Part shown: piece by piece, positions 23,170 through 58,582 of the stretch | Position numbering within the stretch: the stretch's first letter is position 1 | Layout of the letters: each line of letters opens with the position of its first letter | From: Glycera tridactyla | Taxonomy: Eukaryota | Length of the DNA stretch: 64,000 bases | Direction of reading: 5' to 3' | NCBI GenBank assembly: GCA_965644265.1 | Contig: OZ286476.1 | Span: 23,498,001-23,562,000, forward strand | Notes under the pieces: generated by a model | Told to the model about the DNA's origin: nothing | What the model saw: only the letters and a program-made list of their open reading frames with translations | Database searches by the model: none | Program-made: the position numbers and the translations under genes

Positions 23170-23580
23170 GGATAAATAGCAGCGCCACCACCTCTCAGCG
23201 GCCGCTCAAGAAACTATCGCTATTGAAAATGTTGAAATAAAATTTTCCCGGGTGAAACCTATTACGACTGCAGCGCCACCGCCTCTCCACGGTCACTTCC
23301 GGAACTATCAGTATCGAGATGGCGGAGAACACGTTTCTTTCATACGTCGAGGAATATAACGTTCGGATATTCGAATTTCACGGCGAGTAGAGATGAATCG
23401 ATCAAGAAACTATCGCTATTAAAGATGTTGAAATAAAAGTTTCGACTGCAGCGTCACTGTCTCTCCGCGGTCACTTTCGAAACCATCAGTATCAAAATGG
23501 CGGAGTACACGTTTCTTTGGACGTCAAGGAAGGAATAAAACGTTCGGATATTTGAATTTCATGGCAAGTAGTGATGATTC
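23170..23580. repeat. ~200-bp tandem duplication with promoter-like motifs
   Basis: TCAAGAAACTATCGCTATT occurs at ~23208 and ~23403. Each unit has a (G/A)ATGGCGG YY1-like motif; unit 1 has CACTTCCGG (ETS-like). Confidence 0.45.
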
Positions 23581-28199: not shown

Positions 28200-28286
28200 C
28201 TGCCAATGAAGTCAGTGATGCGTGACGTTGATTATGGAGCGCCAATTGCTACATCTTATCATGAACTGTTGGGGGGGGGGGGGGGT

Positions 28287-28926
28287 GAGTAGATATTGTC
28301 AGTTACAGTCAAACTTGTCCTAAGCATGAAGACAGTGTGCTTAGAGCAAGTTCATGCTTATGCTTCTATTCACAGCTGGCTAGAGTAGACAAGTAGATTT
28401 GGTATTGTTGAGTAGACATTGTCAGTCACAGTCAAACTTATCCTAAGCATGAAGACAGTGTGCTTAGAGCAAGTTCATGCTTATGCTTCTATTCACAGCT
28501 GGCTAGAGTAGACAAGTAGATTCGGTATTGTTGAGTAGACATTGTCAGTCACAGTCAAACTTATCCTAAGCATGAAGACAGTGTGCTTAGAGCAAGTTCA
28601 TGTTTATGCTTCTATTCACAGCTGGCTAGAGTAGACAAGTAGATTTGGTATTGTTGAGTAGACATTGTCAGTTACAGTCAAACTTATCCTGAGCATGAAG
28701 ACAGTGTGCTTAGAGCAAGTTCATGCTTATGCTTCTATTCACAGCTGGCTAGAGTAGACAAGTAGGTTTGGTATTGTTGAGTAGACATAGTCAGTTACAG
28801 TCAAACTTATCCTAATCATGAAGTCAGTGTGCTTAGAGCAAGTTCATGCTTATGCTTCTATTCACAGCTGGCTAGAGTAGACATCGTCAGTTACAGTCAA
28901 ACTTGTCCTAAGCATAAAGTCAGTGT
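28287..28926 (+). repeat. 123-bp satellite array, ~5 units
   Basis: Unit starts (ATTGTCAG and variants) at 28295, 28418, 28541, 28664 and 28787; the last unit has an internal deletion. Confidence 0.95.
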
Positions 28927-29204: not shown

Positions 29205-29229
29205 AACATCACTGAATGAATGCACTTTA

Positions 29230-32200: not shown

Positions 32201-33801
32201 ATGAACACCTACTGCCCATCACAAAACCTTCTTCACACTGCACCATCTGATCTTGGCAGGACTCAATATCAAATGCAATATACATAAAAATATCATTCTT
32301 GCCTACTTTAGCTAGACCTTTGGTTTTCGAAGATCTAACGTAGCATCCATGATGGCCAACAAAATATCTAATACATCGCCTACACAAATATTCTCCACAA
32401 ATGTGCTGTTCACGAGAATGTGAACTACTTGACATGGTCTTAGTGCAGGTTGAGCATCTCCAAGATGATGAACACATTGTATACTTCTTCTTCCTCCCCC
32501 TCATTTTCAGGTGTTGTTCATAACAGTAGTTTGAACGACAAATCTTATTACAATCATCACGAACAATACACTCGGATGAGGCGTTTGACAGACATTTTAC
32601 CATCGAACATACACTGCATTTTTTACAACATCTATGATGCTCCTCACTCACAGCTGCCTGTTAACATGCATTGCAATAATAACCTTTACCAAATAACCCT
32701 TTGTGGGTTTGTTACTGCATCGAAATGATACTTGTCTGGGCTGAGCATCATATGAAACACATGAACGGGAGGATAGCGTTCATTCACTAACCTATCGTCT
32801 GGTTTCCGAAATAGTCCATTGTAACAAGTATTAGAAATTATGCTCACTGCTATTTTAAATGCATGCTCAATTTTCGGAATATCTTCAATCTTAAAATATT
32901 TATTTTCATCGAATCCACTCATTCTCATCATTATCTTAGCACCCTGAGTCTGCTCATTCCTTTGTCAACTCTTCAAATCATTATACAGACTATCTGAAAC
33001 CAAGTGGTTCTCCATAGCCATCTCAATGCGCTTTTTATCCTTTATATGGCTAAAATGTTCTAGCCATTCCTTATTCCTCATTCGACGATGAAATGCCCAT
33101 GCAACCAAAATGGCTCTAACAAGACACATAGAATCATCGTTATTTATAACAACCATCGAGTGCTTTCCCTCCCTATCATTTCTCTCTCCTCGCAAACGCA
33201 ATAATGGAAATGCTGCACCACCCTGCTGTCTATTTATAATTTGAATTTGAACCCTCAAACTATCATCTGCAAGAATATCTTGCTTGGACTGTGATACAGC
33301 AGCAATCCTGTCCAGAATGACATCAGGTGTCACCTCATGCATTTCCATCAAAGGGACCACCATAGGAGACTCTAGCCCATTTTGATATATCACCATTCTA
33401 AACAATGAATCAGGCTGAACTTCTTCTCTGAACAAATCAATTATGCTACTGAAAACCTGGCGAAGAGATGATGTCATATCTATCATCAGAGGAGCATTCT
33501 GTAATAGTGATGCATTCAATGCTACATCAAACGTAACACTCATCCCCCGACAATTTAAAAAATAGCGCACATCCCTCCAAACATTAGAATACAACGGCTG
33601 CACTCTCTGAATTCGCCCCAGTTCCTCGTCTTGGCCTACTTGTGGCAAGCTGGGTGGACTATTGTCATCACCAAATCCAATCTGGTCATCCTGCAATACA
33701 TCCAAACATGCATGACTTACATCAACTGCCTGCCATTCATAACACGACATTTGCATTCGTCTTCCTTGTTGCCACTGGTAACGCATAATATCATCTGCCA
33801 T
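29230..33801 (-). pseudogene. pPolB: Protein-primed DNA polymerase B with N-terminal extension (OTU-like and Cys-rich domains), disrupted
   Basis: AFDIES (ExoI), SHNGSRYD (ExoII), NDVVIL (ExoIII), GCMWHGC, YGGRVE, DFCSLYP (A), KLALNSLSGK (B), YSDTDS (C); several stops and frameshifts. Confidence 0.95.
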
Positions 33802-33947
33802 CTAGTGAATACGATCATACAACAATGACAGCTGCTAACACTGACCTCTGCCGCATTCATCCTTCAGTACCATCAGATACAACGACAACTGCTAACACTG
33901 CCCTCTACTGCTAACAGCACATCTGATCGACTGTCGTCTACCAGATT

Positions 33948-34193
33948 CAGTTGAACCTATCTATAAAGACCGCCTTGGGTCTTATGGGCAAGTGGTCTTT
34001 ACAGAGAGGTCATTTACTTTTGAAATACTACCACGGTCACAGCTGAGGTGGTCTTTGAAGCAGGTTTGACTATACAATGACAGCTGCTAACAAGGCGGTC
34101 TTTATAGGCAAGTGGTCTTTACAGAGAGGTCATTTACTGTTGAAAATACTACCGCGGTCACAGCTCAGGTGGTCTTTAGAGCAGGTTCAACTG
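33948..34193. mobile_element. TA-target MITE (CAGT...ACTG) with internal duplication
   Basis: CAGTTGAACC / GGTTCAACTG termini. Confidence 0.7.
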
Positions 34194-34442
34194 TACAATG
34201 ACAGTTGCCAACACCGCCCTCTGCTGCTAATAACACATACTCACCTCCTGCTGATCTGTTCCCAGGTCGCCCCCACTGTTGATGTCACCATTAACCTGCA
34301 AAAAAATGGCAATACATAATTCGCAGAACATTCGCAGTCTTCTCATACAACAATGACAACTGATGCTAACACTGACCTCCACCGCTAATAACACATCAGA
34401 TCAACTGCCAACTACCAGATACAAACACGACAGCCGGTAATA

Positions 34443-34550
34443 CATTGAAACCTGTCTTGGGAGACCACTCTTTATCCGCTCTTAAATACCTGTCTTGAGA
34501 GACCGCTTTTCTTTGGTATTTGGAGCGGTCTCCCAAGACAGGTTTTACTG
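34443..34550. mobile_element. TA-target MITE
   Basis: TA-CATTGAAACCTGTCTTGGGAGACC...GGTCTCCCAAGACAGGTTTTACTG-TA. Confidence 0.8.
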
Positions 34551-35106
34551 TACTGTCGTTACCAGATACAACAGCAACTGGTTACACTGGCCTCTACCGC
34601 TGATAACACACCAGATCAACTTCCGCCTACCAAATACAACAACGACAACTGCCAATGCCTTTCTCTACTGCTAACACCGCATACTCACCTCCTGCTGATC
34701 TATTTCAGGTTTGCTGCCACCATTGTCAACTCCATTAACCTGCAATAAATTGACAATACATCATCCACCAGTACAGAGATTACACTTGTAACATTCTCAC
34801 ATGCACACTACAACGTCTGCTGTCAACCGTTCCATTAATTGTTCTACTCACCTAATGCGACATCCTCATACCAAGCAAATACCAATATCTATAATCATAA
34901 AACATTTGCGAAATGTGTTACATCAAATATATTATCACAGCATCAGTAATAATATCATACTCACAGCGTCATCATGCTCCATGTTTGATCGAACATCGAA
35001 AATATCCTGATCGCTATCATATACATCATCAACCACCTGTTATAACAGCAAATACGTCCTGTTAACACCAATAACTACTAATTGTGTTTCTACCCATCCT
35101 ACTGTA

Positions 35107-35550
35107 CAGTAAAACCTGTCTTGGGGGACCGCCCTAAATGCCAACAAAAAGTGGCCACTCAAGACTGGGTGTGTCTCATTGGAGGTATATTTGACTATGG
35201 CAAATAGAGAAGAGCAGATATAGAGCAGTCTCCCATTAGAGGATGGTCTCCCAAGACAGGTTCCACTGTACTATTCTTCACCTGCCTCCTCCCCTGAATC
35301 ATATATTCCACACACTCGTGGTCCTATTAACACCAATAATTACTAACTGCGTTTCTACCCTTCCTACTGTACAGTAAAACCTGTCTTTGGAGTCCGCCCC
35401 AAAAATGCCAACAAAAGTGGTCTCTCAAGACAGGGTGTCTCTCATTGGAGGTATATTTGACTATGGCAAATAGAAAAGAGCAAATATAGAGCAGTCTCCC
35501 ATTGAAGAGTGGTCTCCCAAAAGAGGTGTCTCCCAAGACAGGTTTCACTG
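35107..35550. mobile_element. Two tandem TA-target MITEs (35107-35268, 35372-35550) duplicated with their flanks
   Basis: TA-CAGTAAAACCTGTCTT...AAGACAGGTT(C/T)CACTG-TA. Confidence 0.8.
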
Positions 35551-35588
35551 TACTATTCTTCACCTGCCTCCTCCCCCTGAATCATATA

Positions 35589-35750
35589 CAGTGAAACCTG
35601 CGATGAGAGACCACCTTCAACGGGAGACCACCTTTCCAGGGCAGCTTTTCTGTTTGATATAGTCAAATATACCTCCGACGAGAGACCACTTCTTTTGAGA
35701 GACCCCTTTTTGGTATCAATCAGGGCGGTCTCTCTTCGCAGGTTTCACTG
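35589..35750. mobile_element. TA-target MITE
   Basis: TA-CAGTGAAACCTGCGA...TCGCAGGTTTCACTG-TA. Confidence 0.85.
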
Positions 35751-36282
35751 TATTCTACGCTGAATACATGTCCGTCCACCTCTTCATTCATCTCTAAGTA
35801 TAATCTACTCCACTTAAGTTACGAAAATATCTACAATCTATTATTCACTACACTTTATCTGTCAATCTTCTACTAAACCAATACCACTTACTTCTTCGTT
35901 GGCTGCAACCTCAGAATTACATGAATAAATACTTCTATCGTCATCATCACGAACCTCGGAGCTATCTGATGTAACACAGACACAAACTTCATGATCAGTA
36001 GTAGACGAGGGTTCCTCACGAGACACACTCACTTCCTGGAATAGAATATACCATCCGTACTATAACAGACTAATGCAATCACCTCCTAATTAAACTCTCC
36101 ACGTAATTCGTCCGTCTGCTGTCATCTATCATATCCATTCACTCAACCCTCGCATTGATCCTGCAATCTGTCAATTGTCAACCCTGACTATCACTTAGCA
36201 AATGGTAGAAGCCTGCTAGTCTACAGTAGACCACATGCAACTATAATAATATTCAATCATTATGCTGTATATATAAACTATC

Positions 36283-36747
36283 TCACCTCTGATTGTGGCT
36301 GTCAAAACGTACCCTTCTGTTTGTTTTTGATGACGAATCTTCATCGTCATCGTCATCATCATCAGTTTTCTCGGGTCTTTGTGATAGGGATGTACTTCCC
36401 GTGACAGGATAATATCCCGTGAGACCATAGACAAGTGACAGTACACGGTCCAATGCTAATGAAGGAATTTCCTCAAATGCGCGTTGAAAATTGACAGTAC
36501 CCAACATAGACACTGCTTGCTCTCTAACATTCTGTCATGGGTGTTTCGGAAGCTCAGAATAATCCATGCTTTGGACTGTCTCATTGAGACCATCGATGAG
36601 TCGCCCCTGCACATATTCTTCTTGACATAGAGAACTGTCTTCAGCAACCAACTGTTCTAGTTGTTGATCACTAACTCGACGTGCTAACTGACGAGACTTT
36701 GACATCCTAGTGTCATCATCCACAGCACGTAATAACGACATCGCCAT
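36283..36747 (-). pseudogene. ~155-aa orphan with acidic C-terminus (frameshifted)
   Basis: ORFs 36535-36747 and 36283-36513 join into the protein seen at 54321-54785. Confidence 0.65.
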
Positions 36748-36796
36748 CTAAAACCACCAATCACTATAAGAAGACATACTAACTAAATATCATATA

Positions 36797-36955
36797 CAGT
36801 TAAACCTGCTATAAAGGTCACCTGTATCAATCAACCACCTGCCTTAAGCAACCACTTTTGGAAATCCCTCCAGGGTATTTCTCACTATAATTAACCTGTA
36901 TCAGACAAACACTTTTCACTGTCCCAATGGTAGTTGCTGAATACAGGTTTGACTG
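36797..36955. mobile_element. TA-target MITE (orthologous copy at 54835-55010)
   Basis: TA-CAGTTAAACCTG...CAGGTTTGACTG-TA. Confidence 0.85.
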
Positions 36956-37075
36956 TATCACACATATTATCTATCAAATAAATCAAATATCAATACGATC
37001 TACCAATATATATCTACACTAGCATGTTCGCTTTCTGACCATCTTCTTCAACACTCGTAGCAATATCATCTACAA

Positions 37076-38128
37076 TCACAAAAACAACGCACTACTTCCA
37101 GAAAACAACTGCCTTCTAACATATGTTGTCATCATATCACGGAACTTCCTAACATGTGTCCCATTGTCAAGCTTTGAGCACAATCTCATAGTGAACAAAT
37201 GCACGTCTAACTGAGTGTCTTCTATGCTCAAGATATCATCTAACATCATTGATGACTGATGAATCATCAACTCTCTTACCGAACGGTACTCCCATAATGC
37301 CTGTAACCCTCTTAAATGACTCTCATCTTCATTGAACAGCCTACATAAGTAATCATACTTCAGATCCTTGACTACTCTTAACAGAGATATGTCAAATGTG
37401 TCTAACACTTCTTGCATATGCATATAGTCATCTGCCTGTTCTTCCATCATATCTCTCATTATCCTCATCAACTGAAACCACACTGTTTTCTTCATTACTC
37501 TTATATATTCAACAGACCGCTGACTGTTCATCAGATAATATAATGACCTGACATGCCTCCACTCAATACATCTATTTTCTTTTTGTAAATCTCTATATAC
37601 CATAGAAACAGTACCTGCTCTAGATTCCGTACATTTCCTTTTAGTCTTAGGCTCATCATCATCATCTGTGTCTTCAAGATTTATTGGTGAGTTTACACTC
37701 ACACCTCTTCTGTCTGATGACAAGTGACCACTTGTAGAAGGAGATGGAGATATCCGTCTCTCTCTTCTTGCTATAGATGAACGTCTCCCCCTACTTGTTG
37801 ATGGAGCTGCTGAAGGGTTGAAGACGCTCTGACCAACATTAGGAACAGGCACTAAGATTTGTTTACCTCTCATCATTGTTGTTGCTATAGCAGAGTTGCA
37901 TCGAGCAACCTGCAAAGATACTGGCATAACTCCCGCAGTGCTTACTGATGGATGCACATTCTGCCTCTCATCCACTGTAGAAATCTGTCCTGCATTATCT
38001 TCCACCTGGCTAATTTGTAGAACGTAAACAAGACTGGCTCCCATATCTACCACAGAATCATACCCCTGTTGTGTACCCTCGTCTCCAGACATAATCTCAA
38101 ACACGTTCCGTGCATCTCGACTATCCAT
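37076..38128 (-). CDS. 350-aa orphan: S/R-rich disordered N-terminus, acidic/basic NLS-like linker, helical C-terminal domain
   Basis: Intact 1053-bp ORF; same length at 55131-56183; distant homolog at 19.2-19.9 kb. Confidence 0.8.
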   Translation of the reverse strand: MDSRDARNVFEIMSGDEGTQQGYDSVVDMGASLVYVLQISQVEDNAGQISTVDERQNVHPSVSTAGVMPVSLQVARCNSAIATTMMRGKQILVPVPNVGQSVFNPSAAPSTSRGRRSSIARRERRISPSPSTSGHLSSDRRGVSVNSPINLEDTDDDDEPKTKRKCTESRAGTVSMVYRDLQKENRCIEWRHVRSLYYLMNSQRSVEYIRVMKKTVWFQLMRIMRDMMEEQADDYMHMQEVLDTFDISLLRVVKDLKYDYLCRLFNEDESHLRGLQALWEYRSVRELMIHQSSMMLDDILSIEDTQLDVHLFTMRLCSKLDNGTHVRKFRDMMTTYVRRQLFSGSSALFL

Positions 38129-38138
38129 CTTGACAGTG

Positions 38139-38586
38139 CTAATTGACGATTCTGATGATGATAGTCAAGTAGATGTTATTCTCGTGTCGGTCAATCGTGA
38201 ATGCGAGCAACGCAAGCATTGCAGCCACTTCACCAACGTAATGTAAATACTCGATCCTCATATCCAGCGCAAACATTGTCAATTGAATCGCCAGTGCAAA
38301 GAACAATCTCGTCCTCCGTGATTTCACCCTCTCATCACAAACTATAATTTTCAATTTCCGAAAAATATCTACTACTCCTGAATGTCACATCCCTCGTATT
38401 ACATAATGATAAAAATGCACACATCCTTGCATGTGATGACCTTAACACAAATCCAACGAATCGTAATATAAATTCTTCCAGCTTCATTGGTGATGACCTC
38501 CATGAAATATATGTAAACATTTCATGAACAAATAAAGTACGGATTTTGCCATGATGACTTTCAGCGACCAAATTATCCAATACCAA
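38139..38586 (-). CDS. Two small tightly packed hypothetical ORFs (38139-38354, 38335-38586)
   Basis: Conserved in part at 56.2-56.64 kb; short overlaps. Confidence 0.4.
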
Positions 38587-38604
38587 ATCAATGTCATCAT
38601 ATTT

Positions 38605-39021
38605 TTACAAACTACCATCACGAATCCATTTAGAATAATTCAATATCGACCATTTCGACACTGCTCGAAATATGCACAAAGAAACTGCACATAAATACTC
38701 CTTATTCGTAACCAATGATCCCTTGTATGCATTCAACAATAACTCAATTTTTTTCCTTTCAAACGCAAACACTCTCTTCATGCGTCCTATATTGCCATTC
38801 CTTTTACTACTTAATGTATACTGAATCCTTCGAGCAAAAGCAACGACCTCAAACTCATATTTATGCATATAATCCAACTCCGCATCAATACTAACAAATC
38901 CAGATTGAAGGCACCTATTATAGTGAAAACTAATTCCTGACTTCCGCTTGTATTTCTTCAAACATAGAAGACATTTGACTTTTTTCCTACATATCACAAT
39001 CATGAACACATATCTCTTCAT
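38605..39021 (-). CDS. 138-aa orphan with C2HC zinc-finger-like motif
   Basis: CLLC-x12-H-x3-C; ortholog 56630-57040; paralog 39930-40358. Confidence 0.7.
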   Translation of the reverse strand: MKRYVFMIVICRKKVKCLLCLKKYKRKSGISFHYNRCLQSGFVSIDAELDYMHKYEFEVVAFARRIQYTLSSKRNGNIGRMKRVFAFERKKIELLLNAYKGSLVTNKEYLCAVSLCIFRAVSKWSILNYSKWIRDGSL

Positions 39022-39384
39022 CCATCACATTCTGAACATCCACCTTTCCTCATATATATTCCTACCAAAACCACTGATACAAAACCACTGTCATGTTATT
39101 CTATCTATCCATGCAATCATGATATCCTGTAATCCTAAGTCAACATCGATCATATTTAAATTAAATCTCTTACCCCAAAAATCAACAAATCTTGCTACAA
39201 TATTCATCCAATATTCACTTTATATAAACAACACTTCTTTTTGCAGTGATAGTACACACTGATTTATATTAATAAATCTCCTTCAATGTTGACAATATCA
39301 ACAACATATTGCCTCTCTCGCAATCTAGCATCTACACCTCTTCCTTGCTGCGGCGATAACAAAAGAAACGTGCATGCAACATGA

Positions 39385-39660
39385 AAGCACACTGACTTCA
39401 TGCCTAAGACAAGTGTCTACTCATGTCTACTCAACAATACCGAACCTACCTGTCTACTCTAGCCAGCTGTTTTTGACTGTAACTGACAATGTCTACTTAT
39501 CAATACCAAACCTACCTGTCTACTCTAGCAAGCTGTGAATGAAAGCATAGCATGAACTTGCTCTAAGCACACTGACTTCATGCTTAAGACAATTTTTTGA
39601 CTGTATCTGACAATGTCTACTCAACAATGCCAAACCTACCTGTCTACTCTAGCCAGCTGT
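39385..39660 (-). repeat. 123-bp satellite, degenerate, inverted relative to the 28.3 kb array
   Basis: GTCTACTCAACAATACC..CTACTCTAGCCAGCTGT is the reverse complement of the unit. Confidence 0.85.
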
Positions 39661-39781
39661 GAACTTTGGTTGATCATGAGGAGTTCTAGTGTGAACAAGG
39701 AGGGAGAGGATGAAGAGGATGAAGAGAAAGAGAAGGTCTTTTGCCTCACACACATACACACAAATACATACATCTTGAAGG

Positions 39782-39929
39782 TTGCAATAACTTACGCTAA
39801 ATCAATAACAAACACCTTGCTCAAATATACGCTTCACTTTATTGCCTCGATATATGATAACAGCTACCTGTGTAGATACACTACATCTCTTTGTCCACTG
39901 CTGCGGCGATCGGCACTAGTATTACTATT
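39782..39929. repeat. Right TIR of pPolB element copy 1
   Basis: Reverse complement matches 48953-49100 over ~148 bp. Confidence 0.9.
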
Positions 39930-40358
39930 CATAGTCATGATTCTATCATGACTTCCATCATCAAACAAATTCCCTGACCACATGGATATTGACCAAAATA
40001 ATTGCAAACATACTGCATTTATAAACTCCTTATTCCTCACAAGCAATCCTCTATAAGAACTAAATAACACCTCCATTCTCTTCCTCTCATGTTGAAAGAG
40101 TCGTTTCATTTGTTCGGTGTCTCTATTTCTCTTACATTTCTATGCAAGAGCTATCCTCTTTGCCAATTGAATAGTGTCCAATTCATACTCATGTAAAATG
40201 TCTTCCAATAAATCTCCATTATCAAAACTGGACAAAACACACCGTCGATAATGTGATGACATTCCAGCAGAACTTTCACATTTCTGAAGACATATCACAC
40301 ATATTTCTCTATGTCTGAAAACAGGCATTGTGTCCTCAGTCTCAACTATTTCCACCAA
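39930..40358 (-). pseudogene. Paralog of the C2HC orphan, frameshifted and running into the TIR
   Basis: CVIC..CESSAGMSSHYRRC..HEYE...AKRI..ERKRMEVL..Y.G.LV.NKEF aligns with 38605-39021. Confidence 0.75.
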
Positions 40359-48910: not shown

Positions 48911-49250
48911 GCTTTGAAATTTGAGGATTTAACCGGTTGATTTTGGCACCCTAGTAGTAATACTAGTGCCGATCACCGCAGCAGTGGACATAGAGATGTA
49001 GTGTATTTACACAGGTAGCTGTTATTATATATCGAGGCAATAAAGTGAAGCGTATATTTGAGCAAGGTGTTTGTTATTGATTTAGTGTTAGTTATTGTAG
49101 CATAGGTAGGTGACCACTGCAGATCGTGATGAATATATTTGAGCAAGGTGTTTGTCATTGATTTAGGTGACAGTTATTACAGCGAGAAATCTAATATATC
49201 TATGTTGTTGTTGATACTGTTCAAGAACATCACTGAATGAATGCACTTCA

Positions 49251-52200
49251 TCAGACCCCAAGATCAACCTGTGAATGATAACCAAATGGCACGGTCTTAC
49301 CGCCAGGCAGAACAACACGCTTGTCTACTGTGAAGTGGTATGTCTTCGTTGTTGACTTATGTGTTCGCACTTGAAGTGTTTGTTTATCTTTTTCAATAGA
49401 GGGCTGATGCACCTGAACGACAGTGCCCTTGTTGCATCTGTCCTTGAGATATGAGCAAACCATGTCTTTCATGACAGACATGTTTAAGCTCTGTTCAGCT
49501 AAATAGTTGAGAGAGAATCCTTTGTATTTCATAACTCCCTCACCTGAAATGAATCTACAAGCATAAGTCTTTGAGCCAGTGCATACAAATTCATCTACTA
49601 TCTCGCCATCTGGAATCTCTGATGTCAAATCTCCCAGGTAATCGCCGACCCCCAGCGGTTGTTCACTCGGAAGAGTGCTATACAAAATACTATCTGTATT
49701 GGAGTACATCAATCTCTCCTGTAACTCTCCCATTTTCTCATACAATTTCATTCTGCCATAAGCTGTCACAAATGCCGCTATCACTACATTGTTTGTGGGA
49801 CCGGCAGACAGAGCCTCTTTCAGATCAGAATACTCTACCATCATGACATCATCTGAGATAATACTGAAATCCTTCAAACACACCCTCGGATCTGACATCA
49901 GAGTTACCAATTCGTTTGGATTTGATGATGTTATGTACTTTGTCTGTCTCCTATTTACTTTTTCGCTCATCTTGCCGGACAAAGAATTTGATGCCAATTT
50001 AGCTACACTGCGTTTACCACTATTTTCTTTGCATCAAATTTTCATCCAAGCGTATTCCCTCATGTCTCTCATACTCACTGATATACTTTTCAAGGTCTGA
50101 TTTTGATTTACATCTGGGAGGCTTGCCCTCACTCTCTACTTTCATCTTCAAAATGGCATTGACAAACCCTGTCAAATATTCTGCCGATTTCCCATCAAAT
50201 GGATAGATCATACTATGGGTATTAAAAGGATAATGATATGTTTCAATCATTCTCGAAATAGTATAGCCCCTCTTCAACCCCATTTTCAGTTCCTCACTTA
50301 CAAACACACCATCTAACATCCTGTCCGCATCTGAACAAGTGCACCCATCTTGTGAATTCTCTGCAGCACATTTTTTGCATAACGTAGACACCAGATTGCC
50401 TCTGATTCTTGAAGGTAACACTGGTAAGAACAATTTTCTGGGAGGTAGCACCTCACACTTGATCATACCAAAAATATCCCAAACTTCATCAAAATCTGTT
50501 GTTTTGATCACAGGATGAAAACATGGTAAAGGCATATTTTTCTGTACCCATGGATACAGACTGCAGAAATCTGCATAGTGAATGCACGATCCATCCGGCT
50601 CGTCCATTCTGTTCCATAGTAGCCTGACTGACTCAACTCTGCCACCATAAAATCCATCCCTAGGATCTAGTGGATCATCTATCTTCAGAGACTTGTATAT
50701 ATCGCTAGCTTGTTTATTTGCTTGAACTATCAGATCATACTCGTGCTCCCATATACTGATGACCTCTGCACCCGGTGCATTCAACTTTGACAAATAAAGC
50801 ATGGCTGAGGAATACAACTCCTTGTAGGTCCTGCCAGTATTTTTGCATCTCAAGTCCTCTCTCGATGCTGGGAAACATATATTGCATCCATGCCACATAC
50901 AGCCAAAAAGATTATATATTTTTGAATTTTCAGGTACAACTTCTAAGATATGATTGATTGCAGGAACATTTCCATCTCCAGATTCAAATCCGTCAACATG
51001 AACAATTTTTCCATTCCTCTTCCGAATTCTAATTTCTTGAATATTTCCACCATGAGATATTTTCACACCGTCTCTCTGAGACAAGTAGTCTAGCCAAGCA
51101 CAGCACTTTTTACTGAAAAATTTTGAGTGCCTCCTATATCCGAAAGGTGGTGTCATTCCGATAAATGTTTCATCAAAAGACTCTGATATGACTCTGAAAT
51201 CCAAGCTTGTGTCTGCAGACACCATACCATCACCCATGTCAACTTTCAAATGACCTCCCCTTCTAGCACCCGGTACAATCATTCGTTCTCCGTTTTCATT
51301 CTTCTCAACCTCGCATCTCACCATTTCTGTCACATGCAACTTCCTAAAAATGCGCATAGACATTGAAGCTAAAGTAAATACCTCTCTGAGAGGATGCAAA
51401 CCAGCCAGATTAACTATTATATTATCAAATGCTATGATTGCTTTCCTCAAGATAACCACATCATTCACACAGTAATTAATTAATTCATCCTTTAGCACAA
51501 ATATATCACCTGATGCAATTCTTTCATCATACCAAGATCGAAACCTAGTGACTTCGCTAGGTCTCACCCCTTCCACACAGTACATGCTTTTATCTGGGTA
51601 CGGGCCACTATAAGCGAGATCCATATTGTGCACTGTATTGAACAAATGTGGAAAAAAGCCTTTTGTCAGTCCACCGACCACCTCAGATTCAATTTCAAAC
51701 ATCAATGGTAATTTTGAGAGAGCCATCGGCATGAACCTGGCAGAATCTAGAAATCTAATGTTGTACCCTTTTCCAACTTTAAAAAAAAGCAGCTGGGCGC
51801 CGTTCATCACTGTATCAGATATTTTAACATTAGAGGATAACAATTCACGGTATATGAAAAATTGATCATAACGACTGCCATTATGACTCACTACACATGC
51901 GTGAGAATGTTCTGGAACTACGACCCACTGGCAAAATCTACTCACACTATCTAAGCCATAAAAAATGTGCCTACGTCTACCGCATGCGCCATTTTTACAC
52001 GGCGGATACTTGTAATCATGCACTCCTGATGATTGACCCCTACGGGTCCTGCATCTATCACATCAATCACCACAATGAGAGCACTCTAACTGATCTACAA
52101 AACTCAAATTGACGCAATACATGCACCACTTATCAGCTACAACCAAATTTGGAACATGGTTATAACTTCCACATTTGGTTGTGTGACAATTAGTGCATTT

Positions 52201-53749
52201 TGCACAACTAGAACAAGGATACATATCTGCTTCACATGATGAACACCTCCTGCCCATCACAAAACCTTCTTCACACTTCACCATCTGATCTTGGCAGGAC
52301 TCGATATCAAATGCAATATACATAAAAATATCATTCTTGCCTGCTCCAGCTAGACCTTTGGTTTTCAAAGATCTAACATAGCATTCGTGATGGCCAACAA
52401 AATATCTAATACATCGCCTAAGTCTAAGTGCAGGTTGAGCATCTCCAAGATGATGAACACATTGTATTCTTCTTCTTCCTCCCCCTCATTTTCAGGTGTT
52501 GTTCATAACAGTAGTTTGAACGACAAATCTTATTACAATCATCACACACAATACACTCGGATGAGGCGCTTGACAGACATTTCACCATCGAACATACACT
52601 GCATTTTTTACAACATCTATGATGCTCCTCACTCGCGGCTACCTGCTGATATGCATTGCAATGATAACCTTTACCAAATAACCCTTGTGAGTTTGTTACT
52701 GCATCGAAATGATACTCATCTGAGCTGAGCATCATATGAAACACATGAACGGGAGAATAGCCTTCATTCACTAACCTATCGTCTGGTTTCCGAAATAGTC
52801 CATTGTAACAAGTATTAGAAATTATGGTCACTGCTATTTTGAATGCATGCTCAATTTTCGGAATATCTTCAATCTTAAAATATTTATTTTCATCGAATCC
52901 ACTCATTCTCATCATCATCTTAGCACCCTGAGTCTGCTCATTCCTTTGTGAACTCTTCAAATCATTATACAGACTATCTGAAACCAAGTGGTTCTCCATA
53001 GCTATCTCAATGCGCTTTTTATCCTTTATATGGCTAAAACGTTCTAGCCATTCCTTATTCGTTATTCGACGATGAAATGCCCATGCAACCAAAATGGCTC
53101 TAACAAGACACATAGAATCATCATTATTTCTCTCTCCTTGCAAACGCAATAATGGAAATGCTGCACCACCCTGCTGTCTATTTATAATTTGAATTTGAAT
53201 CCTCAAACTATCATCTGCACAAATATCTCGCTTGGACTGTGACACAGCAGCAATCCTGTCCAGAATGACATCAGGTGACACCTCATGCATTTCCATCAAA
53301 GGGACCACCATAGGAGACTCTAGCCCATTTTGATATATCACCATTCTAAACAATGAATCAGGCTGAACTTCTTCTCTGAACAAATCAATTATGCCACTGA
53401 AAACCTGGCGAAGAGATGATGTTATATCTATCATCAGAGGAGCATTCTGTAATAGTGATGCATTCAATGCTACATCAAGCGTAACACTCATCCCCCAACG
53501 ATTCAAAAAATAGCGCACATCCCTCCGAACATTAGAATACAACGGCTGCACTCTCTGAATTCGCCCCAGTTCCTCGTCTGGGCCAACTTGTGGCGAGCCA
53601 GGCGGACTGTCGTCATCACCAAATCCAATCTGGGCATCCTGCAATACATCCAAACATGCATGACTTACATCAACTGCATGCCATCCATAACATGACATTT
53701 GCATTCGTCTTCCTTGTTGCCACTGGTAACGCATAATATCATCTGCCAT
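49251..53749 (-). pseudogene. pPolB: Protein-primed DNA polymerase B, disrupted
   Basis: ORF pieces of 441, 101, 667 and 248 aa with the same motifs as copy 1; motif C reads YSNTDS. Confidence 0.95.
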
Positions 53750-54320
53750 CTAGAGAGTACGATCATACAACAACGACAACTGCTAACACTGCCCTCTACC
53801 GCTTACAGCACATCTGATCATCTGTCGCCTACCAGATTCAGTCGAACCTATCTATAAAGACCGCCTTCGGTCTTATGGTCAAGTGGTCTTTACAGAGAGG
53901 TCATTTACTACTAAACCAATACCACTTACTTCTTCGTTGGCTGCAACCTCAGAATTACATGAATAAATACTTCTATCGTCATCATCACGAACCTCGGAGT
54001 TATCTGATGTAGCACAGACACAAACTCCATGATCACTAGTAGACGAGGGTTCCTCACGAGACACACTCACTTCCTAGAATAGAATATACCATCCGTACTA
54101 TGACAGACTAATGCAATCACCTCCTAATTAAACTCTCCACGTAATTCGTTTGTCTGCTGTCATCTATCATATCCATTCACTCAACCCTCACATTCATCCA
54201 GCAATCTGTCAATTGTCAACCCTGACTATCACTTAGCAAATGGTAGAAGCCTGCTAGTCTACAGTAGACCACATGCAACTACAACAATATTCAATCATTA
54301 TGCTGTATATATAAACTATC

Positions 54321-54785
54321 TCACCTCTGATTGTGGCTGTCAAAACGTACCCTTCTGTTTGTTTTTGATGACAAATCTTCATTGTCATCGTCATCATCAT
54401 CAGTTTCCTTGGGTCTTTGTGATAGGGATGCACTTCCCGGGACAGAATAATATCCTGTGAGACCATATACAAGTGACAGTACATGGTCCAATGCTAATGA
54501 AGGAATTTCCCCAAATGCGCGTTGAAAATTGACAGTACCCAACATTGACACTGCTTGCTCTCTAACATTCTGTGATGGGTCTTTCGGAAGCTCAGAATAA
54601 TCCATGCTTTGGACTATCTCATTGAGACCATCGATGAGTCGCCCCTGCACATATTCTTCTTGACATAGAGAACTGTATTCAGCAACCATCTGTTCTAGTT
54701 GTTGATCACTAACTCGACGTGCTAACTGACGAGACTTTGACATCCTAGTGGCATCATCCACAGCACGTTATAACGACATCGCCAT
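54321..54785 (-). pseudogene. ~155-aa orphan (early in-frame stop)
   Basis: Ortholog of 36283-36747. Confidence 0.65.
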
Positions 54786-54834
54786 CTCAAACCACCAATC
54801 CCTATCAGAAGACATACTAACTAAATATCATATA

Positions 54835-55010
54835 CAGTTAAACCTGCTATAAAGGTCACCTGTATCAATCAACCACCTGCCTTAAGTAACCACTTTTGAA
54901 AATCCCTCCAGGGTATTTCTCACTATAATTGACCTGTATTAGACAGCCACCTGTCTTAAGCAACCACTTTTCACTGTCCCTATGGTAGTTGCTGAATACA
55001 GGTTTGACTG
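54835..55010. mobile_element. TA-target MITE
   Basis: TA-CAGTTAAACC...GGTTTGACTG-TA. Confidence 0.85.
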
Positions 55011-55130
55011 TATCACACATATTATTTATCAAATAAATCAAATATCAATATGATCTACCAATATATATCTACACTCACATGTTCGATTTCTGACCATCTT
55101 CTTCAACACTCGTAGCAATATCATCTACAA

Positions 55131-56183
55131 TCACAAAAACACCCAATTACTTCCAGAAAACAACTGCCTTCTAACAAATGTTGTCATCATATCACGGAAC
55201 TTCCTAACATGTGTCCCATTGTCAAGCTTTGAGCACAATCTCATAGTGAACAAATGCACGTCTAACTGAGTGTCTTCTACGCTCAAGAAATCATCTAACA
55301 TCATTGATGACTGATGAATCATCAACTCTCTTACCGAACGGTACTCCCATAATACCTGTAACCCTCTTAAATGACTCTCATCTTCATTGAACAACCGACA
55401 TAAGTAATCATACTTCAGATCCTTGACTACTCTTAACAGAGATATGTCAAATGTGTCTAACACTTCTTGCATATGCATATAGTCATCTGCCTGTTCTTCC
55501 ATCATATCTCTCATTATCCTCATCAACTGAAACCACACTGTTTTCTTCATTACTCTTATATATTCAACAGACCGCTGACTGATCATCAGATAATATAATG
55601 ACCTGACATGCCTCCACTCAATACATCTATTCTCTTTTTGTAAATCTCTATATACCATAGAAACAGTACCTGCTCTAGATTCCGTACATTTCCTTTTAGT
55701 CTTAGGCTCATCATCATCATCTGTGTCTTCAAGATTTATCAGTGAGTTTACACTCACACCTCTTCTGTCTGATGACAAGTGACCACTTGTAGAAGGAGAT
55801 GGAGATATCCGTCTCTCCCGTCTTGCTATAGATGAACGTCTCCCCCTACTTGTTGATGGAGCTGCTGAAGGGTTGAAGACGCTCTGACCAACATTAGGAA
55901 CAGGCGCTAAGATTTGTTTACCTCTCATCATTGTTGTTGCTATAGCAGAGTCGCGTCGGGCAACCTGCAAAGATACTGGCATAACTCCCGCAGTGCTTAC
56001 TGATGGATGCCCATTCTGCCTCTCATCCACTGTAGAAATCTGTCCTGCATTATCTTCCACATGGCTAATTTGTAAAACGTGAACAAGACTGGCTCCCTTA
56101 TCTACCACAGAATCATCCCCCTGTTGTGTACCCTCGTCTCCAGACATAATCTCAAACACGTTCCGTGCATCTCGACTATCCAT
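55131..56183 (-). CDS. 350-aa orphan (ortholog of 37076-38128)
   Basis: Intact from MDSRDA (ATG 56183), same length. Confidence 0.8.
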   Translation of the reverse strand: MDSRDARNVFEIMSGDEGTQQGDDSVVDKGASLVHVLQISHVEDNAGQISTVDERQNGHPSVSTAGVMPVSLQVARRDSAIATTMMRGKQILAPVPNVGQSVFNPSAAPSTSRGRRSSIARRERRISPSPSTSGHLSSDRRGVSVNSLINLEDTDDDDEPKTKRKCTESRAGTVSMVYRDLQKENRCIEWRHVRSLYYLMISQRSVEYIRVMKKTVWFQLMRIMRDMMEEQADDYMHMQEVLDTFDISLLRVVKDLKYDYLCRLFNEDESHLRGLQVLWEYRSVRELMIHQSSMMLDDFLSVEDTQLDVHLFTMRLCSKLDNGTHVRKFRDMMTTFVRRQLFSGSNWVFL

Positions 56184-56385
56184 CTTGACAGTACTAATTG
56201 CCAATACTGATGATGATAGATAAGTCGATGTTATTCTCGTGTCACTCAATCGTGAATGCGAGCAATGCAAGCATTGCAGCCACTTCACCGACGTAATGTA
56301 AATACTCGATCCTCATATCCAGCGCAAACATTGTCAATTGAATCGCCTCTCATTACAAACTATAATTTTCAATTTCCGAATAATA

Positions 56386-56640
56386 TCAACTGCACCTAAA
56401 TGTTACATCCCTCATATTACATAATGATGAAGATGCACACATCCTCACATGTGATGACCTTAACACAAATCCAAGGAATCGTAATATAAATTCTTTCAGC
56501 TTCATTGGTGATGACCTCCATGAAATATATGTAGACATTTCATGAACAAATAAAGTACGGATTTTGCCATGATGACTTTCAGCGACCAAATTATCCAATA
56601 CCAAATCAATGTCATCATATTTTGACAAACTAGCCATCAC
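56386..56640 (-). CDS. Small hypothetical protein
   Basis: Ortholog of 38335-38586; overlaps the stop of the upstream ORF. Confidence 0.45.
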   Translation of the reverse strand: MMASLSKYDDIDLVLDNLVAESHHGKIRTLFVHEMSTYISWRSSPMKLKEFILRFLGFVLRSSHVRMCASSSLCNMRDVTFRCS

Positions 56641-57040
56641 GAATCCATTTAGAATAATTCATTTTCAACCATTTCGCCACTGCTCTAAATATGCGCAGAG
56701 AAACTGCACATACATACACCTTATTCGTAACCAATGATCCCTTGTATGCATTCAACAATAACTCAATTTTTTTCCTTTCAAATGCAAACATTCTCTTCAT
56801 GCGTCCTATATTACCATTCCTTTTACTACTTAATGCATATTGAATCCTTCGAGCAAAAGCAACGACCTCAAACTCATATTTATGCATATAATCCAACTCT
56901 GCATCAATACTATCAAATCCAGATTGAAGGCACCTATTACAGTGAAAACTAATTCCTGACTTCCGCTTGTATTTCTTCAAACATAGAAGACATTCGACTT
57001 TTTTCCTACATATCACCATCATGAACACATATCCCGTCAT
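56630..57040 (-). CDS. 136-aa orphan (ortholog of the C2HC zinc-finger-like gene)
   Basis: Ortholog of 38605-39021. Confidence 0.7.
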   Translation of the reverse strand: MTGYVFMMVICRKKVECLLCLKKYKRKSGISFHCNRCLQSGFDSIDAELDYMHKYEFEVVAFARRIQYALSSKRNGNIGRMKRMFAFERKKIELLLNAYKGSLVTNKVYVCAVSLRIFRAVAKWLKMNYSKWIRDG

Positions 57041-57452
57041 CCATCACATTCTGAACATCCACCTCTCCTCATATATATTCCTACCAAAACCACTGATACA
57101 AAACCACTGTCATGTTATTCTATCGATCCATGCAATCATGATATCCTGTAATCCTAAGTCAACATCGATCAACTTTACATTAGATTTTCTTACCCCCAAA
57201 ATCAACAAATCTTGCTACAATATTCATCCAATATTCACTTTATATAAACAACACTTCTTTTTGCAGTGATAGTACACACTGATTTATATTGATAAATCTC
57301 CTTCAATGTTGACAATATCAACAACATATTGCCCCTCTCGCAATCTACACTGACTTCATGCTTAAGACAAGTTTGACTGTAACTGACAATGTCTCCTCAA
57401 CAATACCAAACCTACCTGTCTACTTAAGCAAGCTGGGAATAAAAGCATAGCA

Positions 57453-58426
57453 AGCCCATTGATCCGGTTCAAATTTTTAAATACCTGGGCATTATCCTAG
57501 ACAAACACATGTCCTTCCATGATCACTGCGAATACATATCAAAGAAAGCTGCAAAGCGACTATATGCCTTGGCAAAGAGTAGAAAATATATGTCTGCAGA
57601 TACCAGCTTGCAATTGTACAAGTCCCTTATTGTACCAGTTTTCGACTACTGCGATACTGTATACTGCTGTATCTCGGAACAGGATGCTTCTCATCTTCAA
57701 GTCCTTCAGAACAAGGCGTGCAGAACTATTTTGTGCCGGAGTAGATTTACCCCATCCGCTGAAACACATCATGAATTGAACTTGCCTTTACTAAGAGATA
57801 GAAGAGAACTTCATCTTGGCGTTGCAATGTATAAAAATGTGCACAATATATCTCCACAGTATCTCTATGACCTGTTATCTTTCTCAAGCGAACATGGCAT
57901 GGGCACCAGAGGCTCAACCCAATTATACCTTGAACTTCCAAATTCCCGCACTCAAAAAGGCCAAAAAGCCTTCTCCTTCACTGGCCCTCATTTATGGAAT
58001 AGATTGCCCTCTGAAATAAGACAAATACCAGCAAATAGAAAAGGAGCTTTCAAGACCGCTTTCATAAAATGGCAAAACGAATGCAAAAATCAAAACTAGT
58101 AATTCTGCCATGTTTTAGTCTTGAGCAGGACCGGGCACTTTTGGATGGGTCTGGTCTATGATTTCTCCAATAAGATAGGGACCTTCTCCATGAAATGTAT
58201 ACCAGCTGTTGATATGAACAAGTAGTTTGTTATTTCATAGTAAGTATTCATCATACTAAGTTTTCGACGAGCCGAGAAACAACAACATTTTCTATTCATG
58301 TACCATGTGGTAATTACAGTTGCTCTATTCTATTTTTTCAGGGACGGGGGGAAGCATCATTGTTATAATGACCCAATGTCTGCCTGAACTTAAATAAAAG
58401 TTTGTCTATTGTCTATTGTCTATTGT
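57453..58426 (+). mobile_element. 5'-truncated CR1/L2-type LINE inserted in the 123-bp satellite
   Basis: ORF 57509-58099 is the post-RT C-terminus (LYKSLIVP.FDYC, LQNKACRTIL, FSFTGPHLWNRLP). 3' end AATAAA + (TTGTCTA)n; satellite sequence on both flanks. Confidence 0.9.
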
Positions 58427-58581
58427 CTAAGCACACTGACAGGAGGGAGAGGATGAAGAGGATGAAGCCTTGCTCAAATATACGCTTCACTTTATTGCCT
58501 CGATATATAATAACAACTACCTATGTAAATACAATGAATCTCTATGTCCACTGCTGCGGCGATCGGCACTAGTAGTACTAC

Positions 58582-58582
<1 letters not shown>

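What the first reader, a model, noticed from the sequence alone, without database searches (positions are those of the whole stretch)
48953..58582. TIR-bounded pPolB replicon with Polinton ends but no integrase, capsid, ATPase or protease
Seen: 115-bp TIRs with AGTAGT...ACTACT termini enclose ~8.65 kb (excluding the LINE). This holds only pPolB and four or five orphan genes, all on one strand. Known: autonomous Polintons carry integrase and usually MCP, mCP, ATPase and protease. Inference: this is either a capsid-less, linear-plasmid/satellite-like replicon that borrows integrase and virions from helper Polintons, or a deletion derivative. The sister copy keeps a further gene after pPolB, so the parent was longer, but no AT-rich virion or integrase gene occurs anywhere in the window.
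Basis: partly seen in the sequence, partly recalled or inferred. Interest (0 to 1): 0.85.

Follow-up and report, generated by a model that had tools for sequence, protein, structure and literature searches.

The report
Decayed integrase-less Maverick/Polinton remnant
This is a dead, shortened copy of a Maverick/Polinton virus-like transposon that keeps its inverted ends, a broken DNA polymerase gene and four small unknown genes; it sits in a cluster of other Polinton debris that does include capsid, protease and integrase remnants, so it is most likely an ordinary decayed derivative rather than a new kind of replicon.

Summary
The terminal inverted repeats are real: 115-121 nt, 93% complementary, with AGTAGT...ACTACT ends. 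That end motif is already published for Mavericks. No integrase, capsid, ATPase or protease gene lies between them. Three details in the finding are wrong.

- Three of the apparently separate ORFs are pieces of one ~4.5-kb protein-primed polymerase gene. It is broken three times (two frame changes, one stop). Only four non-polymerase ORFs remain, and they have no homologues outside the window (tested exhaustively for the largest only).
- The sister copy's extra DNA is an expanded repeat tract, not a gene.
- The window does hold virion and integrase remnants. A 3.4-kb GC-rich block at 19.75-23.2 kb carries an integrase tail, a double-jelly-roll capsid pseudogene and a protease-like remnant. A third polymerase pseudogene lies at 14.95-18.6 kb.

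The nearest polymerase relatives (25-37% identity) sit in classical Polintons with integrase, capsid and protease, and ATPase in two of the three loci. There is no target-site duplication, and the sister has no left terminus.

Best reading: a decayed, non-autonomous, replication-module-only derivative of a Maverick/Polinton. A propagating capsid-less satellite family is not excluded (about 0.12). The host genome was not available for a census.

The parts
48953..49067 (.). Left terminal inverted repeat. The match to the sister's right end extends to 49097. The outermost hexamer is AGTAGT.
49251..53749 (-). [quoted passage not shown] It comprises an N-terminal lineage-specific domain, a Cys-rich stretch, the exonuclease and the polymerase. 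It is broken three times (two frame changes, one in-frame stop). It keeps 86 of 101 family-invariant positions.
   Evidence: Pfam DNA_pol_B_2 at 5.7e-31; PHROG DNA polymerase hits on the central and C-terminal pieces; collinear matches of all pieces to single relatives; break counts; invariant positions
53756..53909 (.). Short repeat-bearing spacer upstream of the polymerase. The same tract is expanded to about 1.85 kb in the sister (34018-35870).
54321..54761 (-). ORF of 146 codons with no detectable family. It is not open in the sister. dN/dS against the sister is about 1.3.
55131..56288 (-). ORF of 385 codons (350 from the first ATG; the sister's ORF is also 350). The N-terminal half is low-complexity. 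It has no homologue in any database searched.
56386..56640 (-). ORF of 84 codons with no family hit. It is open in both copies.
56630..57040 (-). ORF of 136 codons with a Cys-rich, zinc-ribbon-like motif. It is open in both copies. A 39%-identical paralogue lies at 39978-40328.
57347..57452 (.). One unit of the 123-nt subterminal repeat, interrupted by the LINE insertion.
57453..58428 (+). 5'-truncated LINE-like insertion. It has an ORF resembling the C-terminus of a reverse transcriptase, an AATAAA signal and a (TTGTCTA)n tail. No family match confirms it.
58468..58582 (.). Right terminal inverted repeat, ending ACTACT and followed by a (TG)n microsatellite.
29205..39927 (-). Sister copy, collinear and 95-96% identical. 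Its polymerase is far more broken (about 9 open pieces). It has a right terminus (39785-39927) with an imperfect terminal hexamer. No left terminus exists.
28163..28883 (.). Array of 123-nt tandem repeats left of the sister's polymerase. It is inverted relative to the subterminal units at 39385-39663 and 57347-57452, and may be the inner part of a long left TIR.
19750..23200 (+). GC-rich fragment (60% GC, CpG o/e 0.96) of a classical Polinton integrase/virion module. It holds an integrase C-terminal tail (19999-20073), a double-jelly-roll capsid pseudogene (20996-22185, in several frames) and a protease-like remnant (22704-22956). It has no rve core and no ATPase.
14951..18581 (-). Third, divergent polymerase pseudogene, about 45% amino-acid identity to the element's polymerase and shattered by many stops.
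39978..40328 (-). Paralogue of the 136-codon ORF (39% identity, E 3e-27), abutting the sister's right terminus.

Best explanation
The unit at 48953-58582 is a dead, non-autonomous, shortened copy of a Maverick/Polinton (polintovirus-like) element. It keeps the family's terminal inverted repeats and only the replication half of the genome: four lineage-specific accessory ORFs followed by the protein-primed polymerase, all on one strand. The integrase and virion half (ATPase, protease, major and minor capsid, integrase), which the nearest relatives carry on the far side of the polymerase, is missing. The left terminus sits about 180 bp beyond the polymerase stop.

Shown: the ends, the gene content, the broken polymerase, and the classical architecture of the relatives.

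Inferred: the short form arose by loss of the integrase/virion half. While its genes were still open it could at most supply its own polymerase, so integration and packaging would have had to come from full-length elements of the same genome. Since then both copies have decayed close to neutrally, one has taken a LINE insertion, and neither is functional now.
For: - The TIRs and the (AGT)2//(ACT)2 end motif match a motif published for vertebrate Mavericks (PMC8097293).
- Pfam finds only DNA_pol_B_2 between the TIRs. The same method finds rve, Pox_A32 and Peptidase_C5/C48 in oyster relative L001.
- All polymerase pieces are collinear with single relatives.
- The N-terminal domain is shared with classical elements L001 and L002.
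- L001 and L003 carry polymerase, integrase, a capsid-position ORF, protease and ATPase; L002 has the polymerase plus protease, capsid and integrase remnants.
- The capsid-position ORF gives only double-jelly-roll capsid fold matches.
- L002 has the same layout of several unknown same-strand ORFs upstream of its polymerase.
- Break counts: 3 in the element and many more in the sister. dN/dS between the copies is 0.5-1.3. 15 of 101 family-invariant polymerase positions are lost.
- Capsid, protease and integrase remnants and a third polymerase pseudogene lie in the same window. The flanking 2.2-kb repeats carry polymerase fragments, so deleted Polinton derivatives are common here.
- 96% of vertebrate Maverick loci are degraded (PMC8097293).
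Against: - No full-length copy with the same termini was seen, so the parent is inferred rather than observed.
- There is no target-site duplication, and the flanking repeat does not resume on the other side. Integration of this copy as a unit is therefore unproven.
- The only nearby virion module differs by 20 points of GC and in CpG content. It is probably another lineage, so it is not shown to be the parent or helper.
- The four accessory ORFs have no homologues outside the window (for the largest; tblastn against the three fetched loci for all), so their Polinton ancestry rests on position alone.
- The short form may be shared by both copies (inverted 123-nt arrays). That fits a propagating short family as well as it fits decay.
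Confidence: 0.6

Rival explanations
1. A genuine capsid-less, integrase-less pPolB lineage. In this view a satellite-like short element, consisting of accessory ORFs, polymerase and TIRs, propagates as such and depends on helper Polintons for integrase and virions. These two copies would be old dead members of it.
For: - Both copies share the same internal gene set.
- The sister has 123-nt arrays in inverted orientation on both sides of the same module. That fits a long TIR lying directly beyond the polymerase, so the sister may also be a short form.
- Three of the four accessory ORFs are open in both copies.
- The 136-codon ORF has a diverged paralogue, so it is a real protein family.
- Potential helpers existed in the genome.
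Against: - Only one complete TIR-to-TIR copy is seen, and it has no target-site duplication.
- Both polymerases are broken, and dN/dS is near neutral.
- The nearest relatives all carry the full gene set.
- No relative elsewhere shows this architecture.
- The largest accessory ORF has no homologue in 1.84 billion representatives, so no conserved lineage is visible.
Confidence: 0.12
2. Not a transposed unit at all. The TIR-bounded appearance would be a product of local rearrangement (deletion, inversion, duplication) inside a scrambled Polinton-rich cluster. The two copies would have arisen by segmental duplication rather than by integration.
For: - There is no target-site duplication.
- The left flank is itself a Polinton-derived 2.2-kb repeat that does not resume to the right.
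- About 45 bp of inner TIR sequence is duplicated next to the left TIR.
- The sister has no left terminus anywhere in the window.
- A 2.4-kb tandem duplication at 99.9% identity lies beside the sister.
- Many fragments of at least three Polinton lineages lie within 64 kb.
Against: - The two termini are precise, and they end in the canonical hexamers exactly where similarity between the arms stops.
- The flanks of the two copies are unrelated, which is not what a segmental duplication predicts.
Confidence: 0.23
3. The sister plus the GC-rich block is the full-length parent. In this view one element runs from the integrase tail (about 20 kb) through capsid and protease to the convergent polymerase and on to the right terminus at 39927. 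The finding's copy would be a one-off deletion of that element.
For: The order and orientation are integrase tail, then capsid, then protease on the plus strand, followed by a convergent minus-strand polymerase. That is exactly the architecture of oyster L001 and of L002.
Against: - GC is 60% against 40% and CpG o/e is 0.96 against 0.54, with sharp edges. Modules within the relatives differ by 8 points of GC or less.
- The integrase is cut off at the edge of the block.
- There is no ATPase, and 6 kb of non-coding repeats lie in between.
- There is no left terminus.
- Matching side and strand by chance has odds of only about 1 in 4.
Confidence: 0.1

Closest known systems
Degraded Maverick/Polinton loci of animal genomes (Barreat & Katzourakis 2021, PMC8097293; Kapitonov & Jurka 2006 as cited there)
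   Same: Protein-primed polymerase; TIRs within the published size range (46-1447 bp); the (AGT)2//(ACT)2 end motif; stops and frameshifts. 96% of vertebrate loci are in this degraded state.
   Different: No integrase or virion genes lie between the TIRs. The unit is 8.65 kb, against 12.7-24.6 kb for intact elements. No 6-bp target-site duplication is present. The polymerase is only 25-37% identical to any database relative.
Capsid-less Polintons (nine elements lacking MCP, protease and ATPase together; Krupovic, Bamford & Koonin 2014, PMC4028283)
   Same: Concerted absence of the whole capsid-morphogenesis module while the polymerase is kept.
   Different: Polintons by definition encode the RVE integrase as well as the polymerase (PMC5499653), and those nine are Polintons. 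Here the integrase is missing too.
TIR-flanked polinton-related insertions of Pieris butterflies that lack polB (bioRxiv 10.1101/2025.02.07.637071)
   Same: TIR-bounded Polinton derivatives that lack one hallmark gene, raising the question of trans-mobilisation. They also carry nested LINE or LTR elements.
   Different: The loss is the mirror image. Those keep the integrase and virion genes and lose polB. This one keeps polB and loses the rest. Those are recent polymorphic insertions, whereas this copy is old and decayed.
Linear pPolB plasmids of fungal and plant mitochondria and yeast cytoplasm (derived from Polinton-like ancestors according to Krupovic & Koonin 2015, PMC5898198, listed; my own knowledge of its content)
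   Same: TIRs plus a protein-primed polymerase, with no capsid genes and no integrase.
   Different: Those are extrachromosomal and usually encode an RNA polymerase. This copy is embedded in chromosomal repeat DNA, has no RNA polymerase domain, and its polymerase groups with those of integrated animal Polintons.

Membership tests
Polinton/Maverick | [quoted passage not shown] | tested here: met
   Pfam DNA_pol_B_2 at 5.7e-31. All pieces are collinear with relatives that sit in classical elements. The gene is broken three times.
Polinton/Maverick | Retrovirus-like (RVE) integrase in the element ('by definition', PMC5499653) | tested here: not met
   No rve hit in any ORF between the TIRs. tblastn with the integrases of L001 and L003 finds nothing inside either copy. 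The same tools find rve in L001.
Polinton/Maverick | Terminal inverted repeats with a conserved end motif | tested here: met
   115-121 nt at 93%. The AGTAGT...ACTACT ends equal the (AGT)2//(ACT)2 motif in PMC8097293.
Polinton/Maverick | 6-bp target-site duplication | tested here: not met
   The six bases outside the two ends differ, and the right flank is a (TG)n microsatellite.
Polinton/Maverick | Virion module: double-jelly-roll major capsid, penton, A32-like ATPase, adenain-like protease | tested here: not met
   None lies between the TIRs. Capsid and protease remnants exist 26 kb away, in a compositionally different block.
Polinton/Maverick | Length of about 12.7-24.6 kb for intact vertebrate elements (PMC8097293) | tested here: not met
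   9.63 kb with the LINE insertion and about 8.65 kb without it.
Linear pPolB plasmids (mitochondrial or cytoplasmic) | Extrachromosomal linear molecule | not testable with these tools
   In this assembly the copy is flanked on both sides by chromosomal repeat DNA. Reads were not available.
Linear pPolB plasmids (mitochondrial or cytoplasmic) | Plasmid-type gene set (commonly a single-subunit RNA polymerase next to the pPolB) | tested here: not met
   No RNA polymerase domain in any ORF.
Capsid-less Polintons (PMC4028283) | Joint loss of capsid, protease and ATPase with the integrase kept | tested here: not met
   The capsid module is absent, which fits, but the integrase is absent as well.
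OTU-type cysteine protease domain at the polymerase N-terminus (my impression on reading the sequence) | Detectable OTU family or fold match | tested here: inconclusive
   No Pfam hit at E<0.1. A profile search of solved structures gives only zinc-finger and weak Vsr hits. The structure model has pLDDT 51 and is unusable.

The most novel reading that the evidence does not exclude
The short form is a real, once-propagating family: a replication-module-only Polinton satellite made of accessory ORFs, its own protein-primed polymerase and family TIRs. It would have relied on co-resident full-length Polintons for integrase and capsids. That is the mirror image of the polB-less polintons recently seen in butterflies.
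Probability: 0.12. Interest if true: 0.6.

Novelty: new member of a known kind. Interest (0 to 1): 0.25.

Why it matters
If it is what it seems, it adds one more decayed Maverick/Polinton to a very large fossil record, from a polymerase lineage that is poorly sampled (at most 37% identity to anything in 5.8 billion proteins).

Its modest value is as a pointer. This genome region is a dense cluster of at least three Polinton lineages and of internally deleted derivatives. A genome-wide census there could show whether half-elements that keep only the replication module are ever copied. That bears on how capsid-less pPolB replicons such as linear plasmids could arise from Polinton-like ancestors.

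Tried and rejected
- Homologues of the 385-codon ORF: none in the word-seeded search of 5.8 billion proteins or in the exhaustive HMMER scan of 1.84 billion representatives. PDB and PHROG gave only noise.
- Pfam and PHROG on the other three accessory ORFs: nothing.
- OTU-protease idea for the polymerase N-terminal domain: not supported by Pfam or a PDB profile search. The model is too poor for a fold search.
- Vsr-endonuclease-like insert in the polymerase: a weak profile hit (E 0.02), not reproduced with the window's own stretch.
- PDB sequence search with the central polymerase piece: no hit.
- Target-site duplication and resumption of the flanking repeat: none.
- A left terminus for the sister: none within 4 mismatches per 24 nt anywhere in the window.
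- ATPase or rve-core remnants in 18-29.3 kb at relaxed thresholds: none.
- Rfam: no RNA family in the window.
- Sequence-profile search of the capsid candidates against the PDB: no hit. Only the fold search identified them.
- Host identification: no protein hit above 47% identity in any protein search, so the host genome appears to be absent from the protein collection.


Full report
OBSERVATION. The inverted repeat is real and far beyond chance. The arms lie at 48947/48953-49067 and 58468-58582/58588, are 115-121 nt long and 93% complementary. The only other inverted pair in the 13.5-kb region is 33 nt at 76%. The outermost hexamers read AGTAGT...ACTACT. A third copy of the same terminus, 143 nt at 96%, ends the sister copy at 39785-39927. 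A fuzzy scan finds no fourth terminus in the window. The window has no N runs and no Rfam match. It has an ORF resembling the C-terminus of a reverse transcriptase, an AATAAA signal and a (TTGTCTA)n tail, and it sits inside a 123-nt repeat unit. No family match confirms it.

GENE CONTENT. Pfam finds one domain between the ends, DNA_pol_B_2 at E 5.7e-31. The ORF just downstream of that piece is not a separate gene. It matches the C-terminal third of phage DNA polymerase families. Local BLASTP shows that four adjacent open stretches match single relatives collinearly. P0021 covers the N-terminal and central pieces. P0002 covers the second, central and C-terminal pieces. P0001 covers the central and C-terminal pieces. 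The polymerase gene therefore spans 49251-53749, about 1,480 codons. It comprises a lineage-specific N-terminal domain, a Cys-rich stretch, the exonuclease and the polymerase. The relatives are continuous across the junctions, so these are breaks, not introns: two frame changes and one in-frame stop. Of 101 positions invariant in at least 10 of 12 relatives, the window pieces keep 86.

Four other minus-strand ORFs remain, of 146, 385 (350 from the first ATG), 84 and 136 codons. They give no Pfam or PHROG family hit at informative E-values. The 385-codon ORF has no homologue in a word-seeded search of 5.8 billion proteins or in an exhaustive HMMER scan of 1.84 billion representatives. The 136-codon ORF has a 39%-identical paralogue in the window at 39978-40328 (E 3e-27), so it is a real protein family.

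THE SISTER COPY. Positions 29205-39927 are collinear with the element at 95-96% identity. Its polymerase is much more broken, with about nine open stretches. Three of the four accessory ORFs are open in both copies; the 146-codon one is not open in the sister. dN/dS between the copies is 0.5-0.7 for most genes and 1.3 for the 146-codon ORF. The counts are small, and the values are close to neutral decay. The sister's extra ~1.85 kb (34018-35870) consists of 121-nt and ~265-nt repeats related to a short tract at 53756-53909. It has no ORF above 80 codons, so it is not a gene. At its left end the sister diverges from the element about 25 bp beyond the polymerase stop. About 320 bp of unique DNA follows, and the ORFs there have no family hit. 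Then comes an array of 123-nt repeats (28163-28883), inverted relative to the subterminal 123-nt units at the right ends of both copies. This suggests a longer ancestral TIR (terminus, spacer, 123-nt array) lying directly beyond the polymerase, so the sister may also be a short form with its outer left end lost. To the left of the array, a 2.4-kb tandem duplication at 99.9% identity complicates the region.

THE REST OF THE WINDOW. Pfam on all 25 ORFs of 110 codons or more outside the two copies gave only a weak PC4 hit. Translated searches told a different story. Using the actual ORFs of three fetched relatives as queries showed that the window is a cluster of Polinton debris.

- A GC-rich block at about 19750-23200 (60% GC, CpG o/e 0.96) carries three remnants on the plus strand. 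The first is the extreme C-terminus of an integrase (19999-20073), hit independently by the integrases of L001 and L003 at E 0.012 and 0.005. The second is a capsid-like gene in several frames (20996-22185), at E 1.6e-20 (3e-21 against the smaller database) to the oyster ORF and about 1e-13 to the L003 ORF. The third is a protease-like remnant (22704-22956), with E 2e-4 and 0.011 from two relatives.
- There is no rve core and no ATPase in the block.
- A third polymerase pseudogene lies at 14951-18581 on the minus strand. It is about 45% identical in protein to the element's polymerase and is shattered by stops.
- Small polymerase fragments sit in the dispersed 2.2-2.4-kb repeats at 3.3-3.5, 12.7-13.6, 42.5-42.8, 44.3-44.7 and 47.2-47.9 kb. 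The element's own left flank belongs to this repeat family.

RELATIVES. The central polymerase piece finds 25 proteins at 24-37% identity. The named ones come from oyster, spider, octocoral, leafhopper, beetle, tardigrade, fly and minnow genomes. I looked up three carrier contigs for description only.

- L001 (Saccostrea cucullata scaffold) has the N-terminal domain and polymerase on one strand. On the other strand, convergent with them, lie an A32-like ATPase, a Peptidase_C5/C48 protease, a 438/442-codon ORF and an rve integrase with a weak Chromo-domain hit (E 0.008, below Pfam's cut-off).
- L003 (a 134-kb contig) has integrase, a 467-codon ORF, protease, ATPase, accessory ORFs including a PLA2-like one, and then the polymerase, all on one strand.
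- L002 has six unknown same-strand ORFs upstream of its polymerase. Protease, capsid and integrase remnants lie downstream.

An AlphaFold model of the oyster 438-residue ORF is of low confidence (pLDDT 54). Even so, all 50 top Foldseek matches in the PDB are double-jelly-roll major capsid proteins: Sputnik, PBCV-1, an iridovirus, mavirus, ASFV p72, faustovirus and PR772. E-values go down to 3e-9 with TM-scores of 0.2-0.3. This supports the fold class only. The polymerase lineage of the finding, including its N-terminal domain, therefore belongs to classical Polintons. The methods used also detect the hallmark genes where they exist.

WHAT IT IS AND HOW IT WORKED. The element keeps the replication half of an L001/L002-type architecture (accessory ORFs, then polymerase) between family termini. 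It lacks everything that in those relatives lies beyond the polymerase. I infer that the integrase/virion half was lost. While its genes were open, such a form could at most have primed and copied its own DNA. Any integration or packaging would have required proteins from full-length elements. This is inference: nothing here shows mobilisation. At present both copies are pseudogenised and one carries a LINE, so neither is a working replicon.

Three observations keep an in-situ rearrangement origin alive, at about 0.23. There is no 6-bp target-site duplication. The Polinton-derived flanking repeat does not resume on the right. About 45 bp of inner TIR sequence is duplicated beside the left TIR.

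The GC-rich block sits on the correct side and strand to be the missing half of the sister. However, it differs by 20 points of GC and by twofold in CpG, whereas modules within the relatives differ by 8 points or less. Its integrase is cut at the block's edge, and 6 kb of non-coding repeats intervene. I rate that reading at about 0.1.

COMPARISON WITH WHAT IS KNOWN. Polintons are defined by a pPolB plus an RVE integrase (PMC5499653). Typical copies have 6-bp target-site duplications, TIRs of 46-1447 bp and (AG)3 or (AGT)2 end motifs, and 96% of vertebrate loci are degraded (PMC8097293). Nine Polintons lack capsid, protease and ATPase together (PMC4028283). TIR-flanked polintons lacking polB have been reported in Pieris butterflies. 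This element meets the polymerase, TIR and end-motif criteria. It fails the integrase, target-site duplication, virion-module and length criteria. It is best filed as a decayed derivative of the family, not as an autonomous member. It resembles linear pPolB plasmids only in gene poverty. It is chromosomal, has no RNA polymerase gene, and its polymerase groups with those of integrated animal elements.

NOVELTY AND SCORE. New member of a known kind; interest 0.25. The most novel reading not excluded is a once-propagating, replication-module-only satellite family. I give it a probability of about 0.12 and an interest of 0.6 if true.

LIMITS, SLIPS AND STEPS LEFT OUT.
- The host genome is not in the protein collection: no protein hit exceeded 47% identity in any search. 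The genome-wide census, which is the decisive test, could not be run.
The 84-, 136- and 146-codon ORFs were therefore searched only against Pfam, PHROGs and the fetched loci.
Comparisons across breaks report counts only. Consensus lines printed by the alignment tools were not used.
- Possible slip 2: the three look-ups returned contigs carrying integrated, apparently near-complete Maverick/Polinton elements of an oyster and of unnamed hosts. I used them only to describe gene order and as search queries. I made no further look-ups once I saw what they were.
- I ran no pattern scans of public collections and fetched no adintovirus or adenovirus comparator.

Noticed in passing
window 19750-23200: Sharp-edged GC-rich block (60% GC, CpG o/e 0.96, in 40%-GC surroundings). 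It holds an integrase tail, a double-jelly-roll capsid pseudogene and a protease-like remnant of a classical Polinton. Its composition suggests a different lineage or history from the AT-rich copies.
   Followed up: yes
window 14951-18581: Third, divergent protein-primed polymerase pseudogene on the minus strand, about 45% amino-acid identity to the element's polymerase and with many stops.
   Followed up: partly
window 39978-40328: Paralogue of the 136-codon accessory ORF (39% identity, E 3e-27), ending a few bases from the sister's right terminus. An unannotated 226-codon ORF (40661-41341) lies upstream on the same strand.
   Followed up: partly
window 3.0-3.5, 11.4-14.7 and 44.1-48.9 kb: A 2.2-2.4-kb repeat family, partly in tandem and 90-97% identical between copies. 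It contains short fragments of the polymerase N-terminal domain and C-terminus, so it looks like heavily deleted Polinton derivatives. The element's left flank is one of these units.
   Followed up: partly
window 23635-26047 and 26054-28464: A 2.4-kb tandem duplication at 99.9% identity that ends inside the 123-nt array. It is either very recent or an assembly artefact.
   Followed up: no
window 61603-62079; L001 17524-17904: PC4-like (ssDNA-binding transcriptional coactivator) ORF. The Pfam PC4 hit is 1.1e-14 in the oyster element, just beyond its integrase, and 1.5e-4 in the window ORF; the two are homologous (E 4e-12). It may be a Polinton accessory gene.
   Followed up: partly
polymerase relatives (alignment A3, profile positions 724-796); central part of window 49251-53749: Weak profile match (E about 0.02) to Vsr very-short-patch endonucleases between the exonuclease and polymerase parts. 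It was not reproduced with the window sequence alone.
   Followed up: partly
L003 9140-9511: A parvovirus-type phospholipase-A2-like domain (PF08398, 6e-13) is encoded immediately upstream of the polymerase in a classical Polinton relative.
   Followed up: no
L001 4493-5620: PIF/Harbinger-type DDE transposase ORF (DDE_Tnp_4 plus HTH_Tnp_4), about 1.5 kb upstream of the oyster element's polymerase gene (7095-11703); probably a separate transposon insertion.
   Followed up: no
window 41573-42575, 10591-11275 and 45001-45697: A satellite of about 380 nt in three places in the window, adjacent to polymerase fragments.
   Followed up: no
window 50000-58000 and 30000-41000: Strong, uniform negative GC skew (-0.23 to -0.35) over both copies, including the accessory-ORF region. 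This fits one long coding or transcribed strand.
   Followed up: no
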